Positions 9,065 to 17,003 of a stretch of 17,003 nucleotides of DNA are shown here, one piece after another (the stretch's first letter is position 1; each line of letters starts with the position of its first letter). The position numbers and the translations under genes were made by a program. A model generated the notes under the pieces. The model worked only from the letters and a program-made list of their open reading frames with translations, ran no database searches and was not told where the DNA came from. This stretch comes from Fonticula alba ATCC 38817 (Eukaryota > Protista > Nucleariida), in assembly GCA_000388065.2 (NCBI GenBank), contig KB932205.1; one strand, 5' to 3'.

Positions 9065-10589
9065 TTAGGTGGACTTCTCGATCGCATCCTTGATCGCCTT
9101 GGCGAGGCCGGTGGCATCCTTGTCGTTGAGGGTGCGCAGCAGGTAGCGAATGGGGGCCGGCTTGCCGTCGTCACCGACCTTGAAGGTGACAAAGTCCACC
9201 GACTTGCCCGAAAGGGTGGCCGAGGACTCCTTGAGAACGGCAGCATTCAGCAGCAGCTTGCCAGAGCCCTCCATTCGGGCGACCAGGCGGTACTTGCCAT
9301 TGGCGCGGTGCTTGTTCAGCTTCAGGAAGCCGATGCCCTGATCGACCCAGGCCTTGTTGGCCAGCTCGAGCAGCTTGAAGCGCTCGACCTCGAAGACGGC
9401 ATCCTCGTCCTCCTCGCCGGCGCCGGTCTTGATGAGCTCCTCATTGGTGCGCGTGCACTCGGGCAGCGGGGCATCGTCATCCTCCTCGTCCTGGGCAGCA
9501 GCAGCGGCAGCGCCGGTGGCACCGGCCGCGCCGAAGGTCGGCGGAGTGAAGGTGAAGGCCGAGCTACCACCAGCACCGAAGGAACCGCCCGCGCCGCCTG
9601 AGAGGGGGGTGAAGTTGAAGCCACTGGCCGAGCCACCGGCCGGGGCGGGCGGGCTGAAGGTGAAGGTGCTGGACGAGAGGGACGGCTGCTTGGCGTCACC
9701 ACCGGCCGGGGCCGGGGGGTTGAAGGTGAAGGCACTGCTGGCCCCGGAGCCGAAGGCCGGCGCGGCACCCTTGGCCCCGGGGGCGCTGCTGGTGGCGGTG
9801 CTCAGCGCGCCGAAGGTGGTGGCGCCAGAACCAAACTGGAAGCCACCGCTGTGCGGCGCATCACCGGACGCCTTGAACACGAACTTCGAGTCCTTCGGGG
9901 CCGGCCCGTCATCCTCATCCTCATCGGCATCCTCATCATTGGACCCGGACCCGGACCCGGACTCGGACCCGGACTCGGACTCGGAACCCGAGCCATCATC
10001 ACCCTCCTCGGCCTCGTCAATGTAATCGGCATCCTCCTCGTCGTCGTCGTCGTCGTCATCGTCGTGACCACCATCGCTGCTGTCCTGCATCTTGGAAGAG
10101 GGGGCCCCCGCACCAAAGCCGAAGCCACCGGCAGTCGACTTGGTGGCAGTGAAGCTGAAGCCGCCCGACAGCGGCTTGGTGGCATCAAGGCTGGACCCAC
10201 CGGAGACGGGCTTGGTCATGCCAAACCCGAGGCCCTCGGAGGCCGGCTTGGCCGCGCCGAAGCTGAAACCGCTCGAGGTGGGCTTGGAAGCGGCGCCGGC
10301 ATCGCCGGCGGCCGAGGAGGCGGACCCGGACCCGGACCCGGACCCGGAGGGCATACGAGCAAGCATTTCCCGACGGTAGGTGCTATACCGATCGGCGAAG
10401 AAGGTCAGATCGACAAAGGGATCATTGCTGATGGCCTTATTAAGGGTGGCCATGGCGCTCTTGTTGAGGGCGCTCAGCTCAGAGAGGATGCTCTCGACAG
10501 ACGTGCTGGAAGTGGACCCGGCAGCGGGGCTGGCCATGGTGGACGGAGTGGCCAACCCGAAAGAGAGGCCGGTAGCGGTAGAGCCAAAA

Positions 10590-10621
<32 letters not shown>

Positions 10622-11267
10622 AGTAGCAGAGGCAGCCGCAGGGCCACCAGTGCTGGGCTTGCTGAAGGAGAAGCCGCCGCCGAAGCCAGCCGCTGGGGAA
10701 GGGGCGCTGCGCTTGGAGGGCGGCGGTGCGGTGCTCAGAGACGACTGCGAGCCGAAGCTGGACCCGCCAGCCGGAGCCGGCGTCGGGGTTGACAGATTCT
10801 TAAAAGGGTTGTTCTTCTGGATGCGCTCCTGGACGAGGCAACGGGCATGGCAATTAGCGAGGGAGGCAGGGAGACCGAGGGGAATGCCCCATGAAGGGGC
10901 ATCATGGAAGGGGCGACAATGAGCGAGATGAGGAGGAAGGCGCATGGATGGATGTGTGCGTGTGTGCGTATGTGCGTGTGTGCTGTCTGTGGACAGGGCG
11001 GCCGTACCCCAAAATCGGACTCCTTCACCCGGCGGGCGGCCTTGAGGATTACGCGGCTGGCGCCGGTGTTCTGTGGCAGGCAATATGACATCGGAAGAAG
11101 AGGGAGGAAAAGGAGTGAGTGGTTGCCGTGGGGAGAGACCGGGGGAAAAGGCGGAGATAGCGGAAAACCGGACGCACACCACGGGGGGCGGTGCTTGAGG
11201 GGACATCGACCGAGTCATCGTCGGCCGAGTACGGGTTGAGCTGGCTGCCAGCCTGACGCTTGGACAT
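9065..11267 (-). CDS. NUP50: Nup50/Nup2-like nucleoporin (importin-alpha-binding N-terminus, FG/FxF repeats, C-terminal RanBP1-type Ran-binding domain), ~638 aa
   Basis: Inferred exons 11267-11178, 11070-11008, 10828-9065 (phase 0, GT-AG, GCTAAT branch point in intron 2). The N-terminus MSKRQAGSQLNPYSADDD...RVILKAARRVK resembles Nup50 MAKR..../R.IKKAKRR. The central LSALNKSAMATLNKAISNDPFVDLTFFADRYSTY matches the Nup50 'L.ALN...NP..DLT' helix. Many GFSFG/FTF repeats; RanBD GEEDEDAVFEVERFKLLELANKAWVDQGIGFLKLNK...YRLVARMEGSGKLLLNA. Confidence 0.88.
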
Positions 11268-12223
11268 TGCTGCAGCGGGTGCGGTGGGGGAGAGAGAGGG
11301 GGAGAGAGAGAGGGAGGGAGGGAGAAAGGAAGGGAGAGGTTTAAAGGTGCAAGGGGCAGTAGATGCGGTGTGCCCATCCCCGGGGGCGGCTGGACTCCAC
11401 GCCTGACTGTCTTTTAGACACCCCTCAGGTGTCGGCGGCCCCGCACGGTGCAGAGGGGCATGTGTGCTGGCGCGCGTGCGCGTGTGAGCGGGCAAGGGCC
11501 CAGGGGAGCAAGGGTGTATGTGCCCACGCCGCGGTGCGCGTGCACCTCCGGCCGAGACCCTCGGACAGGGGCGCAGGAACCTCGGGACGGAGACCGCCTC
11601 GTCAGGGAAAACAGCGCGCAGGGACCAGCCAGGGAGCCGGACCGACCAGGGCAGAGTAGAACCGACCAAATGAAGGGGACAGAACGAGGGAGGGGGGGGG
11701 GGGCACTCAACAGCCATCTAACCGCAACCAACGTGGCGGGCGCGCGGGAAGCTGAAACGGACGCTGACCAATCCCCAAGTGCCAACGCAATGGAGAATGT
11801 TATTCGCGACTCTCGGCGGGAGCGGCCGCCGCGGGAGGCAGGAGGGGAGGGGGGCATGCGTGACGGATTTGGGTGTATTGCTCAAAAGATTGTGGGGACG
11901 GCAAGGCCGATTGAAAAAGAGGGCACACAAAAGGCACGGGGCCTTGGGCAGAGAGAGAGAGAGAGGGAGGGAGAGAGAAAGAGAGAGAGGGAGAGAGCGG
12001 GAGGGAGAGGGGGAGGAAAAAAAAGGGCCCCGCCTCAGGTCCTGAATTGCCTTTCCTTCGCGCAGGCTGGCATCTCCAGGCTTGTCTAGATGAGGGTGGG
12101 CCGGGGAGCTGACCCATGGATGGGAGAAGAACCACAGGGCAAACCTGGCGGAGGAGCGGGCCACAGGAGGATGCATTCACAACAATCGGGACCTGCCCTC
12201 GATGCACCGCCGATCGGGGCCTG

Positions 12224-14858
12224 CTACTGCTGGTCTTTGTTGAACCTCTTGTCATTGCGCTTGGACCGGTCATCCTCCTGGTGGTTCGACTGGCGCTCGG
12301 GAGATTGGGACGAGTGGTAGCGGCGCGGGCCATGATGCCTGCGCTGCTGCGAGTCATGTCGCTGGCCCTTATGGTCGACCCATTTCTCGTTGGAGTTCGA
12401 GCGGTGGCGCTGTTGCTGGTCGCGCTCCTCCCGGTGCCGCTGGATCCGCTCAACGCGCTTCTGATGCCGATACTGGGACACCGACATGCCGGAGTCCACG
12501 CCAAAGAAGGTGCCATCCACATCCGGCGCATGGGTAGGATGCACCACACGTGTGCTCTTCCGATCTGAGTCATGTCGCTGGCCCTTATGGTCGACCCATT
12601 TCTCGTTGGAGTTCGAGCGGTGGCGCTGTTGCTGGTCGCGCTCCTCCCGGTGCCGCTGGATCCGCTCAACGCGCTTCTGATGCCGATACTGGGACACCGA
12701 CATGCCGGAGTCCACGCCAAAGAAGGTGCCATCCACATCCGGCGCATGGGTAGGATGCACCACCGGGGCCGGGGCCGTGTCGCCGGACGAGGCGGATTTG
12801 GCGGCCGCCGCCGCCGCCGCTGCCGCCGCATTCGCATCCGCATGCGCCTGTAGACGATCACCCAGGGCCTTCAGCACCGGCCGATTGGACTCATCAGCCA
12901 CCAGCTTCATGATTGCCCGGTTGCGATCCATGCGCTTGTAGAAGACCGTCACCGGGGTGCCAGGGGCCAGGGCATTTAGCAGGGAAATCTTGATTGGGGA
13001 CATCTCGGACGCCTGATCAATGATACCGTCATTGGTCAGGGCATGGGTCAAACTATCGCCCTCGGGAACCAGGAAGTCACCAGAGTGCACAAAGCCACTG
13101 GTGGAGAAGGGCGGAAGCAGCTCGATCATGATGCCAAAGTCCAACGACTGGATCACCTTGGCCGGGTATGGCTGGTTCTCCACCAGTCGACCCATCTTTT
13201 CAAGGAGAACGGTGGTGGCAGCCTGTCTCGGGAACCAGGAAGTCACCAGAGTGCACAAAGCCACTGGTGGAGAAGGGCGGAAGCAGCTCGATCATGATGC
13301 CAAAGTCCAACGACTGGATCACCTTGGCCGGGTATGGCTGGTTCTCCACCAGTCGACCCATCTTTTCAAGGAGNNNNNNNNNNNNNNNNNNNNNNNNNNN
13401 NNNNNNNNNNNNNNNNNNNNNNNNNNNNNNNNNNNNNNNNNNNNNNNNNNNNNNNNNNNNNNNNNNNNNNNNNNNNNNNNNNNNNNNNNNNNNNNNNNNN
13501 NNNNNNNNNNNNNNNNNNNNNNNNNNNNNNNNNNNNNNNNNNNNNNNNNNNNNNNNNNNNNNNNNNNNNNNNNNNNNNNNNNNNNNNNNNNNNGCGGGAT
13601 CATCAAAGCACACGGGCGGACCTTGATGGAGTCATGGTTGGCACCGGAGATATGGATGACGGCTTCTCCAGAACTGTCGGACGAAATGCTGACCGAGACA
13701 ACTGCCGGTGTGTCGGGTGGTCGAGTTAGGAGGGCGCAGAGGATCAGGGGGCCAAAGGGCAGCAATGCATGTGTGCACGTACGGTATTCCTCCTCAAAGG
13801 CGCGAATCGGGTAGGAGAACCCGAAGAGCGAAGAGATGAGCTCATTGTGGACAGGGACCACCTCTGCAGAGATGGACACGCGGGAGGCGTGGACGTTAGT
13901 CGAGGATCGATGAGCAGGGCAAAGCCCGGAGCCGGGGAGGGGGGGGGGGGGCGACGACGGGGGAATAGGGCGGGAGCAGCGCACCAACAAGCGGAATGAA
14001 CGGGTTCGGCTCGCACGGCCCCAGGGACTGCACAATCGACAGCATATCATTGTAACGCGTGGCGGAAGCCGCCTCGCAGGCAGTCAGCACTGAAGCAGGA
14101 GCAGGACGGAAGCAAAGGGATGGGAAGGTGGGGAGATGGGGAGACAGGGAGAGAAAGCGAGAGGGAGAGAAAGCGAGAAAGTGAAAGGGAGAGAAGGAGA
14201 GAAGGAGAGAAGGAGAGAAGGAGAGAAGGAGAGGGCGAGAGTGAAGATGGGGAAGTAGAAAATGGCAGGCGAGTAGGCGGGACGCAAGTGGTCAATAAGA
14301 AGGTATGGCCAAAAGGAGGGGGGGGGGATGTTGAGAAGGAAACACAATGCAAGGAGAAAGAGAGGAAGGCAGATCACGCACGAGACTCAACTTGAGGCCA
14401 GGAAAGCCCGACATTGGAGGTGGACTCCACTCGGGCACACACCAGCTCATTGTTGAAGGTGATCATGCTCGCCCGGGCATCGGCACACATTTCCTCCGGC
14501 AGGTCCGGGTCCATGACAACCAGAGGCTCATCGGGGGTCTGGCCGTCCGGGCCCTGGACCGTTGGCAAAAATAGGACACCGTCGACGGCCGACGTGATAC
14601 CGCTGAGGGGGATCCCGGTGCTGTAGAGGGACATCTGCAATGCCAGGGCATTGGCCGAAACGGAGGACCCGTTACAGAGCGTCGGGTCAATGCGATTGCT
14701 GACGGTGTAGAGGGACTCTTCCGGCGGCGGGAGCAGGCGCTGCTGGAGCCGGCAGAGGAGGTCATCTGTGTAGGAGACGGTCCCACGGGGGTGGGACGGG
14801 AGTGCAGAGGGGGAGAGCGGAAGAGTCAGCCAAAGGAGAAGACTTAGGGCGGGGGGGG

Positions 14859-14895
<37 letters not shown>

Positions 14896-16936
14896 GAGCA
14901 ACAAGGGGAACAAAAGGGGCAGAAGGAGGGGGAGGGGAGAACGCACAGGGATCGAAGCTCGACCGCCGGGACACCTGGTCAAAGCCCTCCATCAGGAACT
15001 CCTTGAGGAAGTCCGGCTCCTCCGAGGAGCACAGGGAGATGGAGTTGCTGTTTGGGGCGAAAGGGGGGCAGAATAGAGGTCGAGGTAAGCAACCGAAGGA
15101 GATGCGGGGGGGGGGGGGGGGGGGGGGGCACGGAAAGGACCCCGGAAAGGGCCCGGGAAAGGGCCCAGGAAGGGAGGGAGTGGGGACATACCTGCTGCGG
15201 GCGCGAGTGGGCCGGACTCGGAAGTTGCTGAGACAGGAAGAGGCGGTCTCCGGGGTGCCATCCGCACCGAGGAAGGCCATGGTGGCCGCGCCATGGATCG
15301 AGATCGGGATGTGGTTGTCCACCAGGGCCAGGGTACGAAGCTCGGTGGGCTGGCGACCGGACCGCCGCCGCGGCTGGGCATCCGATCCCGAGCCAAGGCC
15401 GAAGTAGAATCGCTTGAATTCCTGGACAAACAGCTGGGAAAGGGCCTCATTCAGATGGGTGAAAGTGATGGGCTGACTGGCGAACATGGCGCGCAACCGA
15501 AGGGACACATCGCGCACGGCTGTGCGCAGTGCCTGAGAAAAGTCATGCTGCACGAATGTCAAGATGTCAGAATGGACTCGGCAAAGAGGGGAGGAGAGAC
15601 AGAGAGCAAGGGAGATAGGGGGAGGGGGGGGGGCATAAAGAAGACGGAGCAAGACGGCACTCGTACCGGGGAAAGGGTATCATCGGCCAGCAGATTGCGG
15701 ACCGACGGCCCAAGATACTCCTCAACCAGGGCAAATACCAGCGGGAAGGAGGGGGAGCCGGACGTGGTGAGATCCTCGCCGGGGGCAAGGGTGCCGGCCC
15801 CCGGGGGCGCTGCCTTGACAGGAGATGACAACCCGGGCGAGAGGATCTTGACCGAGCAATCGTCCACCAAACGCTGCTGAGCATCGATCAGCAGTTGGAT
15901 CTACCGATCGAGGGGGGGAGGGGGGGGGGGCGAAAAACATCAACAACAGGGACATATGGACACGCGGTGGGCGCGTGTGCACTTGCGAGGACCAAGGCAA
16001 GAGGCAAGAGGCAAGGGGGGGAGGGCCAGGAAACGCGCACCTGCGAATGGGCCGCCTGCACCATTTGCCGGAAGGCATCGCGCGAGGTCGGCTCGCCTTG
16101 GATCTCCAACGAGAGAATTCCCTGGGTGTTGGCCACGCAGACCAGCGAGAAGTGGGCCTTTTGGATTTGCGACGAGGAGGGATTGATGACAATCGATGGC
16201 TTGGGCTCCGGGGAGGAGGGCTGCTGGGTGCCGGCGTTTTGCAGGGTGTCGACCGGATCACTGTCAGCGGCCGGGCGTTCCTGGGGAACGAGAGACACCC
16301 GCACGGCCGCCAGCGCCTCGGCGGGGGGCAGTCGACCGGAGTGAATCAACGAGCAGGCGCTGGCATTGAAGAAAGCCACATCCATCATGTCATGGTGGTT
16401 GGAGTAGATGCTGCCGATGGCGGCGATTTCACCCTGCAGATAAGTGTTGATGGGCTCGCAATTGAAGAGGTCCATGCGCGGGGCCAGCACCCGGGGCAAG
16501 ATCCGCGTGGCCAGGGTGTCGGCTCGCATGGCTTGCTCCGCGCCGGGGACCATTGCGGCTCCCTCCCACAGGAGCTCACGCTCGGGGAAGGTGATCTAGC
16601 GAGGGTGGAGGGAGGTCGGCCGAAAGGGGGAATTGGTCAGAATGGCGCAGAGGGGAGGGGGCGAAAAGGTGCTCCGTAGGGGGGCATACCAAAAGCCTGT
16701 TCGTGGAGAAGGCCTCCGGGCGCCGGGGGTTGATGGCGCTCACGATGGTGTCATATTCGCAGCGACTCTGCACCACAGAGGACAGCTGGGTCACGGTCAC
16801 CTTCGGCAGAGAGATGTCATGGTTGAAGGGGCGCTTGGAGTTGCCGGAGAGGACGACATTCGGCGTGGCCGAGGTCCCGTCATTCAGGTAACTCTTCGAG
16901 ATGGAGCCCACGGAGAAGGCCACCATCGCGCGGTCC
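12224..16936 (-). CDS. PNPT1: Polyribonucleotide nucleotidyltransferase (PNPase)-like protein, PH1-helical-PH2-KH-S1, highly divergent, 5' end beyond window
   Basis: Inferred exons 16936-16690, 16595-16041, 15900-15667, 15547-15192, 15047-14947, 14765-14382, 14089-13985, 13863-13783, 13701-13622, 13222-12224; phases are mutually consistent through to TAG 12226-12224. PH1: GDRAMVAFSV, DVAFFNASACSL, AVRVSL, INPSSSQIQKAHFSLVCVA. PH2: RRSGRQPTELR, IHGAA, CNGSS, LYSTGIPLS. KH: PLVEVVPV. S1: YPAKVIQSLDFGIMIELLP..GFVH. The last exon carries a 216-nt artefactual insertion. Confidence 0.85.
12351..12763. repeat. Identical 197-bp direct duplication (12351-12547 / 12567-12763) separated by the adapter; assembly artefact
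   Basis: Both copies run GAGTCATGTCGCTG...GGATGCACCAC with no differences seen; the spacer is exactly the 19-nt adapter. Confidence 0.95.
12548..12566 (+). other. Illumina TruSeq adapter/primer sequence embedded in the assembly
   Basis: ACGTGTGCTCTTCCGATCT is the 3' end of the TruSeq read-2 primer. Its reverse complement translates to the well-known adapter peptides QIGRAHV and DRKSTR, both visible in the ORF track. Confidence 0.97.
13061..13373. repeat. Identical 147-bp duplication (13061-13207 / 13227-13373) abutting an N-gap; probable assembly artefact
   Basis: Both copies run CTCGGGAACC...TTTTCAAGGAG, and the second ends exactly at the gap (13374). Confidence 0.9.
13374..13593. other. 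Assembly gap (220 N) inside the last visible PNPase intron
   Basis: Run of N. Confidence 1.
14188..14233 (+). repeat. (GGAGAGAA)~5.7 tandem repeat in a PNPase intron
   Basis: Direct reading; reads as a TTCTCTCC pyrimidine tract on the sense (-) strand. Confidence 0.9.
14862..14892 (+). repeat. (GA)n microsatellite in a PNPase intron
   Basis: Direct reading; further GA-rich tracts at 11288-11338 and 11948-12010. Confidence 0.9.
15132..15174 (+). repeat. 12-bp minisatellite (GGAAAGGRCCCN) x3.5 in a PNPase intron
   Basis: ggaaaggacccc ggaaagggcccg ggaaagggccca ggaaggg. Confidence 0.8.
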
Positions 16937-17003
16937 CTGTGTGAGGCAGGGCAACCGGCAGAGGGAGGTCAGTGTACAAGACGGCGGCGACCGGGCAGGG
17001 GGG

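What the first reader, a model, noticed from the sequence alone, without database searches (positions are those of the whole stretch)
14382..15047. PNPase homologue with a dismantled catalytic site: candidate pseudo-PNPase
Seen (hand-spliced PH2 domain): VSRRSSFDP|YDLL, TLCNGSSVSAN (14676-14650) and VMDPDLPEEMCADARAS (14514-14467). Known: active PNPases have RRE(I/L)GHG, ESNGSSSMA and TDILGxEDxxGDMDFK; the Ser triplet and His bind phosphate, and the two Asp (human D538/D544, E. coli D486/D492) bind the metal. By my alignment the RR pair is kept but ExGHG is gone, the third Ser (human S484 equivalent) is Val, D538 is Glu and D544 is Arg. The HGSALFTRGxTQ motif is also eroded (HGAATMAFLG). The frame stays intact over 10 exons with all domains present, so this looks like a maintained non-catalytic protein rather than a pseudogene. 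Inference: a scaffold or RNA-chaperone role, or a dead subunit of a heterotrimer with an active paralogue.
Basis: partly seen in the sequence, partly recalled or inferred. Interest (0 to 1): 0.82.

Follow-up and report, generated by a model that had tools for sequence, protein, structure and literature searches.

The report
Catalytically dead PNPase relative in Fonticula
The amoeba Fonticula alba, a close relative of fungi, has an intact, spliced gene for a very divergent copy of the RNA-degrading enzyme PNPase that keeps the enzyme's shape but has lost nearly every residue needed for catalysis, so it most likely works as a non-enzymatic RNA-binding or scaffold protein.

Summary
The window's minus strand (16926-12224) carries a 10-exon gene. 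My hand-spliced CDS is identical to the public protein H696_03326 of Fonticula alba, annotated "hypothetical protein".

**It is a true PNPase homologue.**
- It has the collinear PH1, alpha, PH2, KH and S1 architecture.
- NCBIfam PNPase gives E=6e-16, and my own HMM built from 70 PNPases gives E=4e-22.
- The AlphaFold model (pTM 0.76) matches only PNPases (Foldseek E about 1e-35).
- It is far outside the family's normal range: 18-22% identity, 58 bits against a 471-bit equivalog cut-off, and no Pfam RNase_PH hit.

**The active site is eroded.** At positions invariant in 71 diverse PNPases (E. coli numbering):
- S439 is V530, D486 is E586, D492 is R592, K494 is S594 and D508 is E608.
- The RREIGHG loop (R398, R399, H403) is deleted or unrecognisable.
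- The FFRR channel loop is also gone, and the KH GXXG motif is degraded to GFS.
- NGSS, the HG motif and the S1 core are kept.
- No reading frame of the locus encodes the missing motifs.

**It still looks like a working gene.** The frame is open (20 and 40 stops in the other two frames). GC3 is 0.78 in the exons, and all introns are consensus GT..AG. RNA runs hold exon words but not intron words.

**Not settled.** The protein's role, whether an active paralogue exists, and its cellular location are untested. I found no close relatives anywhere.

The parts
12224..16926 (-). Whole CDS of the PNPase-like gene (Fonticula alba H696_03326), 10 exons, from the ATG at 16926 to the TAG stop at 12226-12224
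   Evidence: The hand-spliced CDS translates exactly to P0001.
16690..16926 (-). Exon 1 (residues 1-79)
   Evidence: The donor is CTTTTG|gtatgc. A gap of about 1970 N starts 77 bp upstream of the ATG.
16041..16595 (-). Exon 2 (residues 80-264), core of the PH1 domain
   Evidence: The PNPase HMM aligns residues 149-280.
15667..15900 (-). Exon 3 (residues 265-342), end of PH1 and the all-alpha linker
   Evidence: The model has helices at 251-278 and 316-391.
15192..15547 (-). Exon 4 (residues 343-461), start of PH2, including RRRSGR...HG (H427-G428 at 15295-15290). An alternative in-frame acceptor lies at 15532.
   Evidence: hmmalign places residues 402-430 on E. coli 314-341.
14947..15047 (-). 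Exon 5 (residues 461-495). It ends in VSRRSSFDP, the remnant or deletion point of the RREIGHG phosphate and RNA 3'-end loop (R488-P494 at 14968-14948).
14382..14765 (-). Exon 6 (residues 495-623), the PH2 catalytic core
   Evidence: This exon alone retrieved P0001 at 100% identity.
14659..14673 (-). Remnant of the serine triplet: N526 G527 S528 S529 V530. E. coli has N435 G436 S437 S438 S439, so the third Ser is Val here.
14467..14496 (-). Remnant of the metal site, E585-S594 (EEMCADARAS) against E. coli EDHLGDMDFK. D486 is E586, D490 is kept as D590, D492 is R592 and K494 is S594.
   Evidence: The roles of these residues are described in PMC2723993 and PMC12685370.
13985..14089 (-). Exon 7 (residues 623-658), the helix that ends PH2 and the linker to KH
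13783..13863 (-). Exon 8 (residues 658-685), first half of the KH domain. The GXXG motif is degraded to G672-F673-S674 (13822-13814).
   Evidence: G570 is kept, G573 is Ser.
13622..13701 (-). Exon 9 (residues 685-711), second half of the KH domain
12227..13222 (-). Exon 10 (residues 712-1043). It holds the S1 domain (about 13177-12971) and a long basic, Arg/His/Gln-rich C-terminal tail that is absent from canonical PNPases.
   Evidence: The S1 core residues F740, G741, G754 and H757 are kept.
12351..12763 (-). Assembly artefact inside the annotated CDS. A 19-nt Illumina adapter (12566-12548) sits between two identical 197-bp copies, so 72 annotated codons are spurious.
13374..13593 (.). Assembly gap (N run) inside annotated intron 9. 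It is flanked by a 147-bp false duplication of the S1 exon (13373-13227 is identical to 13207-13061).

Best explanation
This gene encodes a real, expressed protein that descends from polynucleotide phosphorylase. On present evidence it is most likely the Fonticula counterpart of mitochondrial PNPT1. It keeps the PH1, alpha, PH2, KH and S1 fold but can no longer carry out phosphorolysis or NDP polymerisation.

**Shown**
- Homology to PNPase and the PNPase fold.
- Replacement of the phosphate-binding third serine (S439 is Val).
- Replacement of the metal ligands (D486 is Glu, D492 is Arg, K494 is Ser, D508 is Glu).
- Loss of the R399 / G-H403-G loop.
- Loss of the FFRR channel loop and of the second half of the KH GXXG motif.
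- An intact, coding-like reading frame.

**Inferred**
- The protein is kept by selection for a non-catalytic job.
- The best-conserved parts are the KH-S1 cap and the ring-forming PH cores. In human PNPase the S1 domain is the platform that binds RNA and the SUV3 helicase. The protein has also gained a long basic C-terminal tail.
- I therefore read it as an RNA-binding or scaffold (carrier-type) protein. Actual RNA cleavage in its compartment would be done by another nuclease, by analogy with fungi, which use hydrolytic Dss1 with Suv3.
For: **Gene model.** My splice equals the public protein.

**PNPase homology.**
- NCBIfam PRK11824 gives E=6e-16 and TIGR03591 gives E=9e-13.
- The best matches among solved structures (PDB) are all PNPases, down to E=1.3e-5, and are collinear over residues 214-277 and 498-759.
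- tblastn matches to 113 metagenomic PNPases cover up to residues 47-757.
- My HMM of 70 PNPases gives 64 bits, E=4e-22.
- The nearest protein-language-model clusters are mitochondrial PNPT1, at score 0.90 with 200 shared features.
- The AlphaFold2 model has pLDDT 74.7 and pTM 0.76. Its top 50 PDB matches are all PNPases, with E down to 6e-35 and TM by target 0.65-0.83. The AFDB and Atlas searches agree.

**Dead site.**
- The residue map is identical across phmmer, hmmalign and five MAFFT modes.
- The replaced positions are 100% invariant in 71 PNPases that are only 35-49% identical to one another.
- D486, D492 and K494 bind the metal, and D492G abolishes activity (PMC2723993).
- Human S482-484, H450 and R446 bind phosphate; D538, D544 and D560 bind Mg (PMC12685370).
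- R446, S484, D538 and D544 are critical for activity (PMC8836086, PMC12599292).
- No frame of the locus encodes GHG or D[ML]DF.

**Maintained gene.**
- There are no internal stops, against 20 and 40 in the other frames.
- GC by codon position is 0.62 / 0.46 / 0.78, close to the neighbouring gene's GC3 of 0.81, while intron GC is 0.54-0.71.
- Four RNA runs hold 30-38% of the words of the locus. None is listed for intron 2, which the four source DNA runs hold at 100%.

**Non-catalytic roles of PNPase are known.** Examples are the E. coli RNA-carrier mode and stimulation of RNA import by human PNPase (PMC8836086). The S1 domain and C-terminal extension form the SUV3 platform (bioRxiv 10.64898/2026.09.06.749684).
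Against: - There is no biochemical evidence.
- No orthologue was found, so dN/dS could not be computed and conservation of the dead site cannot be shown.
The RNA evidence rests on shared 31-mers, with only 11 sampled words for the intron.
- The AlphaFold model was guided by an alignment to PNPases, so the fold match is partly circular. The stretch 443-493 next to the active site is modelled poorly.
- The channel loop and the KH GXXG motif are degraded too, which weakens the idea that RNA is threaded as in PNPase.
- The true N-terminus may lie in an assembly gap, so mitochondrial targeting is unproven.
- E586 could in principle still bind a metal.
Confidence: 0.66

Rival explanations
1. It is a dead subunit paired with an active paralogue. 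Fonticula would also encode a canonical PNPase, and this protein would join it in mixed trimers or regulate it.
For: The PH cores that form the ring are the confidently modelled parts. Nothing I could run excludes a second gene.
Against: No second PNPase was seen in this scan's notes on the genome, but that is very weak evidence. Most eukaryotes outside plants have a single PNPT1 (my own knowledge). At about 20% identity, the trimer interface would have had to co-evolve with that of a canonical partner.
Confidence: 0.12
2. It is a gene on its way out. Selection would have been relaxed after another nuclease took over, so the ORF is intact only by chance or recency and has no function.
For: The fungi studied so far, the sister group, lack mitochondrial PNPase and use Dss1 (PMC9014873, PMC9181182, PMC12599292). 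The protein is an orphan and has eroded everywhere, not only at the active site: only 38 of 92 near-invariant columns are kept.
Against: Divergence to about 20% identity requires far more change than a neutral sequence could take without stops or frameshifts. The same DNA has 20 and 40 stops in the other frames. Codon-position GC periodicity, all splice sites and a foldable core are preserved. RNA runs hold the exon words.
Confidence: 0.12
3. It is still an enzyme. It would be an active phosphorylase or nuclease using a rebuilt site, for example with Glu586 and Asp590 binding the metal, or Arg592 standing in for the cation.
For: N526-G527-S528-S529, D580, E585, D590 and H427-G428 are retained. 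D486 to Glu is a conservative change.
Against: Single substitutions at D492, S484 (human), R446 (human) or D538/D544 (human) already cripple the enzyme (PMC2723993, PMC12599292, PMC8836086). Here all of these, plus K494, D508 and H403, are changed together. The loop that carries R399 and H403 is missing or unrecognisable.
Confidence: 0.05
4. It is an artefact. Mis-assembly or mis-annotation would make a normal PNPase look dead, for example through a lost exon or a wrong splice at the exon 5/6 junction.
For: This assembly is poor around the gene. There is an adapter-mediated duplication in the CDS, an N gap with duplicated flanks in intron 9, and a gap of about 1970 N just upstream. In the MAFFT alignment, the apparent loop deletion falls exactly at the exon 5/6 junction.
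Against: Exons 4-7 (15547-13985) lie in gap-free sequence. Independent 2025 DNA runs and a soil metagenome hold 54-59% of the words of the locus. No frame of intron 5, or of any other part of the locus, encodes GHG or DMDF-like motifs. The metal-site and Ser-to-Val changes lie in the middle of exon 6, far from any junction.
Confidence: 0.03

Closest known systems
Polynucleotide phosphorylase (bacterial Pnp; human mitochondrial PNPT1)
   Same: It has the same five-part architecture (PH1, alpha, PH2, KH, S1) and is collinear with PNPases from about residue 47 to 757. The predicted fold is the same (TM by target 0.65-0.83). NGSS, the HG motif, D480, E485, D490 and the S1 core residues are retained.
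   Different: - Identity is 18-22%, against at least 35% among the 71 PNPases compared (human and E. coli are 40% identical, PMC8836086).
- It scores 58 bits against the 471-bit equivalog cut-off.
- Catalytic S439, D486, D492, K494, D508, R399 and H403 are replaced or missing.
- The FFRR loop is missing and the KH GXXG motif is degraded.
- A basic C-terminal tail of about 170 residues has been added.
Eukaryotic RNA exosome core (Exo9: six RNase PH-like subunits plus S1/KH cap proteins)
   Same: Exo9 is a ring of PNPase and RNase PH ancestry that lost phosphorolytic activity in yeast and animals and survives as an RNA-binding scaffold for hydrolytic nucleases (PMC5735172; bioRxiv 10.64898/2026.09.06.749684). 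It is the best functional analogy for a dead PNPase.
   Different: The exosome is built from nine separate polypeptides of archaeal type. The protein here is a single PNPase-type chain. No partner nuclease has been identified here, and ring formation is not shown.
Catalysis-independent modes of active PNPases (E. coli PNPase-Hfq-sRNA carrier complex; human PNPase in RNA import)
   Same: In these modes RNA is bound by the KH and S1 cap without being degraded (PMC8836086). The carrier-complex structures 7OGK, 7OGL and 7OGM are among the best structural matches.
   Different: Those proteins remain fully active enzymes that switch mode. In the Fonticula protein the loss would be permanent.

Membership tests
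Polynucleotide phosphorylase (PNPase/PNPT1), as homologous family | Collinear architecture of RNase PH1, all-alpha domain, RNase PH2, KH and S1 | tested here: met
   HMM and phmmer matches in PH1, PH2 and KH-S1 are in the right order. tblastn to a metagenomic PNPase covers residues 47-757. Foldseek's top 50 PDB matches are all PNPases.
Polynucleotide phosphorylase (PNPase/PNPT1), as homologous family | Significant match to curated PNPase or RNase PH profiles | tested here: inconclusive
   NCBIfam PRK11824 gives E=6e-16 but only 57.9 bits against a cut-off of 471. TIGR03591 gives 47.6 bits against 525. Pfam RNase_PH_C passes at 22.8 bits against 20.8. RNase_PH, PNPase, KH_1 and S1 are not reported.
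Polynucleotide phosphorylase, as enzyme (equivalog) | Phosphate site: the Ser-Ser-Ser triplet of NGSSS, plus His403 and Arg399 of RREIGHG | tested here: not met
   S528 and S529 are kept, but the third Ser is V530. G402-H403-G404 is absent in every alignment. R399 aligns to a gap or to S490.
Polynucleotide phosphorylase, as enzyme (equivalog) | Metal site: Asp486, Asp492 and Lys494 (plus Asp508, human D560) | tested here: not met
   The aligned residues are E586, R592, S594 and E608. All four positions are invariant in 71 PNPases.
Polynucleotide phosphorylase, as enzyme (equivalog) | Phosphorolytic and NDP-polymerising activity | not testable with these tools
   This needs purified protein.
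Polynucleotide phosphorylase, as enzyme (equivalog) | RNA path: the FFRR (human YLRR) PH1 loop and the KH GXXG loop | tested here: not met
   F77-R80 align to a gap, and residues 84-105 are modelled at pLDDT below 50. GXXG is G672-F673-S674, so the later glycines are lost.
Pseudoenzyme (maintained catalytically dead homologue) | Homology to an enzyme together with loss of essential catalytic residues | tested here: met
   See the rows above.
Pseudoenzyme (maintained catalytically dead homologue) | Expressed and kept by purifying selection | tested here: inconclusive
   The frame is open, with GC3 periodicity and consensus splice sites. RNA runs share exon words but not intron words. No orthologue was found for dN/dS, and read-level splicing was not seen.
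Mitochondrial PNPT1 orthologue | N-terminal mitochondrial presequence, and grouping with eukaryotic PNPT1 | tested here: inconclusive
   The nearest language-model clusters are metazoan PNPT1. The annotated N-terminus has few basic residues, and an assembly gap lies 77 bp upstream. A tree is not meaningful at 20% identity, and I had no eukaryotic sequences to include.

The most novel reading that the evidence does not exclude
On the fungal side of the tree, Fonticula may preserve an intermediate stage of the switch from PNPase to Dss1. In this reading a catalytically inert PNPase ring stays in the mitochondrial degradosome. It would act as an RNA-capturing, Suv3-docking scaffold for a hydrolytic RNase II-type nuclease. 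That would be an independent, single-chain replay of how the eukaryotic exosome core (Exo9 with Dis3) arose from an active phosphorolytic ring.
Probability: 0.1. Interest if true: 0.85.

Novelty: new variant of a known kind. Interest (0 to 1): 0.55.

Why it matters
PNPase is regarded as a highly conserved enzyme. The reviews I read describe eukaryotic lineages as either having an active mitochondrial PNPase (animals, plants) or lacking it altogether (yeasts, trypanosomes).

A full-length PNPase that keeps its fold but has lost its chemistry has not, as far as my searches show, been described. One full-text search for PNPase together with "pseudoenzyme" returned nothing relevant.

If the protein is functional, three things follow:
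- It would show that the catalysis-independent roles of PNPase (RNA binding or carrying, helicase docking) can be enough to keep the protein.
- It would give a natural separation-of-function variant for studying those roles.
- It would mark a possible intermediate in the replacement of PNPase by Dss1 near the root of fungi, mirroring the inactivation of the exosome core.

It also corrects a public annotation. A "hypothetical protein" with no domains becomes a PNPase-like protein, and 72 of its annotated codons turn out to be a sequencing-adapter artefact.

Tried and rejected
- **Single exons against Pfam and PDB.** These gave almost nothing, only RNase_PH_C at E 0.04-0.09. The homology shows only with the whole protein or with PNPase-specific profiles.
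- **Atlas search with exon 2 alone.** This gave misleading M16-peptidase leads at scores of 0.86 or lower. I rejected them once the full-length query gave PNPT1.
- **Exhaustive phmmer of exon 6 against 1.84 billion representatives.** It found only the protein itself plus repetitive bacterial proteins (P0002-P0007), which I judged to be low-complexity noise.
- **Word-based searches and a metagenome scan with P0001.** Two searches of 5.8 billion proteins (whole protein, and residues 400-800) and one metagenome scan found no relative. No dN/dS was therefore possible.
- **First AlphaFold run.** With 20 gammaproteobacterial PNPases as the alignment it was poor (pLDDT 48). The run with 75 diverse PNPases was usable.
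- **The search for related loci with E. coli PNPase.** It returned only close gammaproteobacterial genes, too narrow for a profile. It was replaced by the alignment-seeded metagenome scan.
- **Hidden catalytic exon or alternative splice.** I considered this and rejected it. No GHG, RRE[IVL]G or D[ML]DF is encoded in any frame of 12200-17003, and intron 5 is CT-rich low complexity.
- **Fate of the RR pair.** I could not decide between 'loop deleted' and 'loop kept in length but unrecognisable'. The answer depends on the gap penalty.
- **The scan's own notes.** They hold nothing on a second PNPase, Suv3 or an RNB nuclease in this genome. That says little, since only things that struck readers are noted.
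- **Atlas search with RNase_PH clusters excluded.** It showed only PNPase fragments and no large family of similar dead PNPases.

Full report
**What is there.** The finding lies in a GC-rich eukaryotic gene on the minus strand. Reading the three minus-strand frames, I spliced ten exons:

| Exon | Window coordinates |
|---|---|
| 1 | 16926-16690 |
| 2 | 16595-16041 |
| 3 | 15900-15667 |
| 4 | 15547-15192 |
| 5 | 15047-14947 |
| 6 | 14765-14382 |
| 7 | 14089-13985 |
| 8 | 13863-13783 |
| 9 | 13701-13622 |
| 10 | 13222-12227 |

All introns have GT(A/G)(C/T)G donors and (C/T)AG acceptors, and several have CTRAC branch-point motifs. An exhaustive search with exon 6 returned a 1043-aa protein that contains it at 100% identity. 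My spliced CDS translates to that protein exactly. It is "hypothetical protein H696_03326" of Fonticula alba, with no precomputed Pfam domain, on scaffold KB932205.1.

**Is it a PNPase homologue?** Yes, but an extreme one.
- Single exons hit nothing convincing.
- The whole protein matches only PNPases among solved structures. The best is E=1.3e-5, and the matches are collinear over residues 214-277 and 498-759.
- It matches the two NCBIfam PNPase equivalog models at E=6e-16 and 9e-13. The scores are only 58 and 48 bits against cut-offs of 471 and 525.
- Pfam reports only RNase_PH_C, at 22.8 bits.
- I seeded a metagenome scan with an alignment headed by this protein. It gave 113 PNPase loci that tblastn links to it at 19-27% identity, some over residues 47-757.
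- An HMM built from 70 of these full-length PNPases (41-84% identical to E. coli) scores the protein at 64 bits, E=4e-22, in three collinear stretches: PH1, the NGSS region of PH2, and KH-S1.
- Protein-language-model features place it nearest to mitochondrial PNPT1 clusters, at score 0.90 with 200 of 256 shared features.
- With those PNPases as the alignment, AlphaFold2 gives pLDDT 74.7 and pTM 0.76. The first attempt, with a narrow alignment, failed.
- The model's top 50 PDB matches are all PNPases, bacterial and human, with E down to 6e-35 and TM by target 0.65-0.83. The AFDB clusters and the Atlas give only PNPases too. Because the alignment guided the model, this fold evidence is not fully independent.

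**Is the catalytic site gone?** The map onto E. coli numbering is the same in phmmer pairwise alignments, in hmmalign with posteriors of about 0.8-0.9, in five MAFFT modes and in the tool's own alignment:

| E. coli residue | Fonticula residue | Status |
|---|---|---|
| N435, G436, S437, S438 | N526, G527, S528, S529 | kept |
| S439 | V530 | replaced |
| D480, E485, D490 | D580, E585, D590 | kept |
| D486 | E586 | replaced |
| D492 | R592 | replaced |
| K494 | S594 | replaced |
| D508 | E608 | replaced |
| K510 | T610 | replaced |

Every one of these columns is invariant in 71 PNPases that are only 35-49% identical to each other. The literature gives the roles of the lost residues:
- D486, D492 and K494 hold the metal in E. 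coli, and D492G abolishes both activities (PMC2723993).
- In human PNPase, phosphate is held by S482-484, H450 and R446, and Mg by D538, D544 and D560 (PMC12685370).
- R446, S484, D538 and D544 (E. coli R399, S439, D486, D492) are the residues called critical for catalysis (PMC8836086; mutant table in PMC12599292).

All four critical residues are changed here.

**The RREIGHG loop.** This is the one ambiguous part. MAFFT pairs FDPY with FPPY and deletes K397-G404, exactly at the exon 5/6 junction. A profile alignment with stiffer gap penalties keeps the length and pairs R489 with R398, S490 with R399 and P494 with H403. AlphaFold is unsure over residues 443-493. In every version G-H-G is absent, and at most one Arg survives. 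I looked for a hidden exon or alternative splice that could restore the motifs. No frame between 12200 and 17003 encodes GHG, RRE[IVL]G or D[ML]DF.

**Erosion beyond the active site.**
- Only 38 of 92 near-invariant PNPase columns are kept, and 23 of 62 in PH2.
- The FFRR loop of PH1, which guides RNA in the channel, aligns to a gap and is disordered in the model.
- The KH GXXG motif is reduced to G-F-S.
- By contrast, KH-S1 is the best-scoring stretch at 28.5 bits, with the S1 core residues F740-G741, G754 and H757 kept.
- The protein ends in a long Arg/His/Gln-rich tail that canonical PNPases lack.
- In the human degradosome, the S1 domains and the C-terminal extension form the platform for RNA and for the SUV3 helicase (bioRxiv 10.64898/2026.09.06.749684).

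**Gene or pseudogene?**
- The frame is open for 1043 codons, while the other two frames of the same CDS carry 20 and 40 stops.
- GC at codon positions 1, 2 and 3 is 0.62, 0.46 and 0.78. GC3 is 0.67-0.94 in every exon, like the neighbouring gene (0.81). Introns are 0.54-0.71 GC.
- A sequence that drifted neutrally to about 20% identity would not have kept this pattern. That is an inference, not a measurement.
- Four small RNA runs of the source organism hold 30-38% of the 31-mers of 13600-16950. Exon-internal words make up about 56% of that stretch.
- For intron 2 alone, the four source DNA runs hold 100% of the words and none of those RNA runs is listed (only 11 sampled words). This fits a spliced transcript.

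**Assembly caveats.**
- A 19-nt Illumina adapter at 12566-12548 sits between two identical 197-bp copies. As a result, 72 codons of the annotated tail are spurious and the true protein is about 971 aa.
- The N gap at 13374-13593 lies in intron 9 and has a 147-bp duplicated flank. The annotated exon 9/10 junction is nevertheless collinear with E. coli, with no missing residues.
- A gap of about 1970 N begins 77 bp upstream of the ATG. The true N-terminus, and hence any mitochondrial targeting, is unknown.
- Exons 4-7, which carry the finding, lie in clean sequence. Independent 2025 DNA runs and a soil metagenome also hold that sequence.

**Relatives and paralogues.** No close relative appeared in 1.84 billion cluster representatives (exon 6 query), in 5.8 billion proteins or in metagenome contigs. 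An Atlas search that excluded RNase_PH clusters found only PNPase fragments. I had no way to search the Fonticula genome for a second PNPase, Dss1 or Suv3, and the scan's notes are silent on them.

**Interpretation.** The most likely reading (about two in three) is a maintained, catalytically dead PNPase derivative. It would keep the ring fold and the KH-S1 cap for RNA binding, partner docking or both. The context fits: the yeasts and other fungi studied so far lack mitochondrial PNPase and use hydrolytic Dss1 with Suv3 (PMC9014873, PMC9181182, PMC12599292). PNPase also has documented catalysis-independent roles (PMC8836086). The eukaryotic exosome core is a precedent for a phosphorolytic ring turned into an inert scaffold (PMC5735172).

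The rival readings are:
- a dead subunit paired with an active paralogue;
- a relic under relaxed selection;
- a rebuilt active site;
- an assembly artefact.

Each is listed in the rival explanations with the result that would refute it.

**Novelty and score.** It is a new variant of a known kind, namely a pseudoenzyme form of PNPase. It is interesting mainly for the evolution of mitochondrial RNA decay. Its value is limited by being a single-species orphan with no biochemistry and an untested paralogue question.

Noticed in passing
window 12351-12763 (minus strand): An Illumina TruSeq adapter (19 nt, 12566-12548) is embedded in the assembly between two identical 197-bp copies. The public protein H696_03326 therefore carries a false 72-residue duplication, including the adapter-encoded residues DRKSTR.
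   Followed up: yes
window 13061-13593: An N gap (13374-13593) is followed by a 147-bp exact duplicate of part of the S1 exon (13373-13227 is identical to 13207-13061). This is a gap-edge assembly artefact lying in annotated intron 9.
   Followed up: yes
L082 3954-5923, starting just beyond window position 17003: A run of about 1970 N begins 77 bp upstream of the annotated start codon, and another 2.1-kb N run lies further on. The 5' end of the gene may be incomplete. A possible acceptor (cacacag|G) lies 11 nt before the ATG, with the frame open upstream of it.
   Followed up: partly
window 9065-11377 (minus strand): A long ORF with FG/FxFG-type repeats, an acidic stretch and a C-terminal RanBP1 domain (Pfam PF00638, E=2e-14) looks like a Nup50/Nup2/RanBP3-type protein. 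The public annotation instead calls a 197-aa gene with no domains on the opposite strand at window 9432-10025, which is probably spurious.
   Followed up: partly
window 15532-15549 (minus strand): Two in-frame acceptors lie 15 nt apart at the start of exon 4 (gtgcag|CATGAC... and ttctcag|GCACTG...). Alternative use would add or remove the residues HDFSQ.
   Followed up: no
runs X5, X7, X9, X11, X25, X26 (organism B, 2025) and X6 (soil metagenome): DNA runs under another organism label, and a soil metagenome, hold 34-82% of the 31-mers of this locus, introns included. The same or a very close Fonticula strain is therefore present in those samples. Large 2026 RNA-seq runs carry that same label.
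   Followed up: no
AFDB cluster hit A0A6A5KTN3; Atlas cluster with a Chytridiomycota member: The best AFDB structural neighbour is an unnamed 931-aa protein with 16% identity. An Atlas cluster of PNPase fragments also has a chytrid member. These hint that some fungi may carry PNPase-like genes, contrary to the usual summary that fungi lack PNPase.
   Followed up: no
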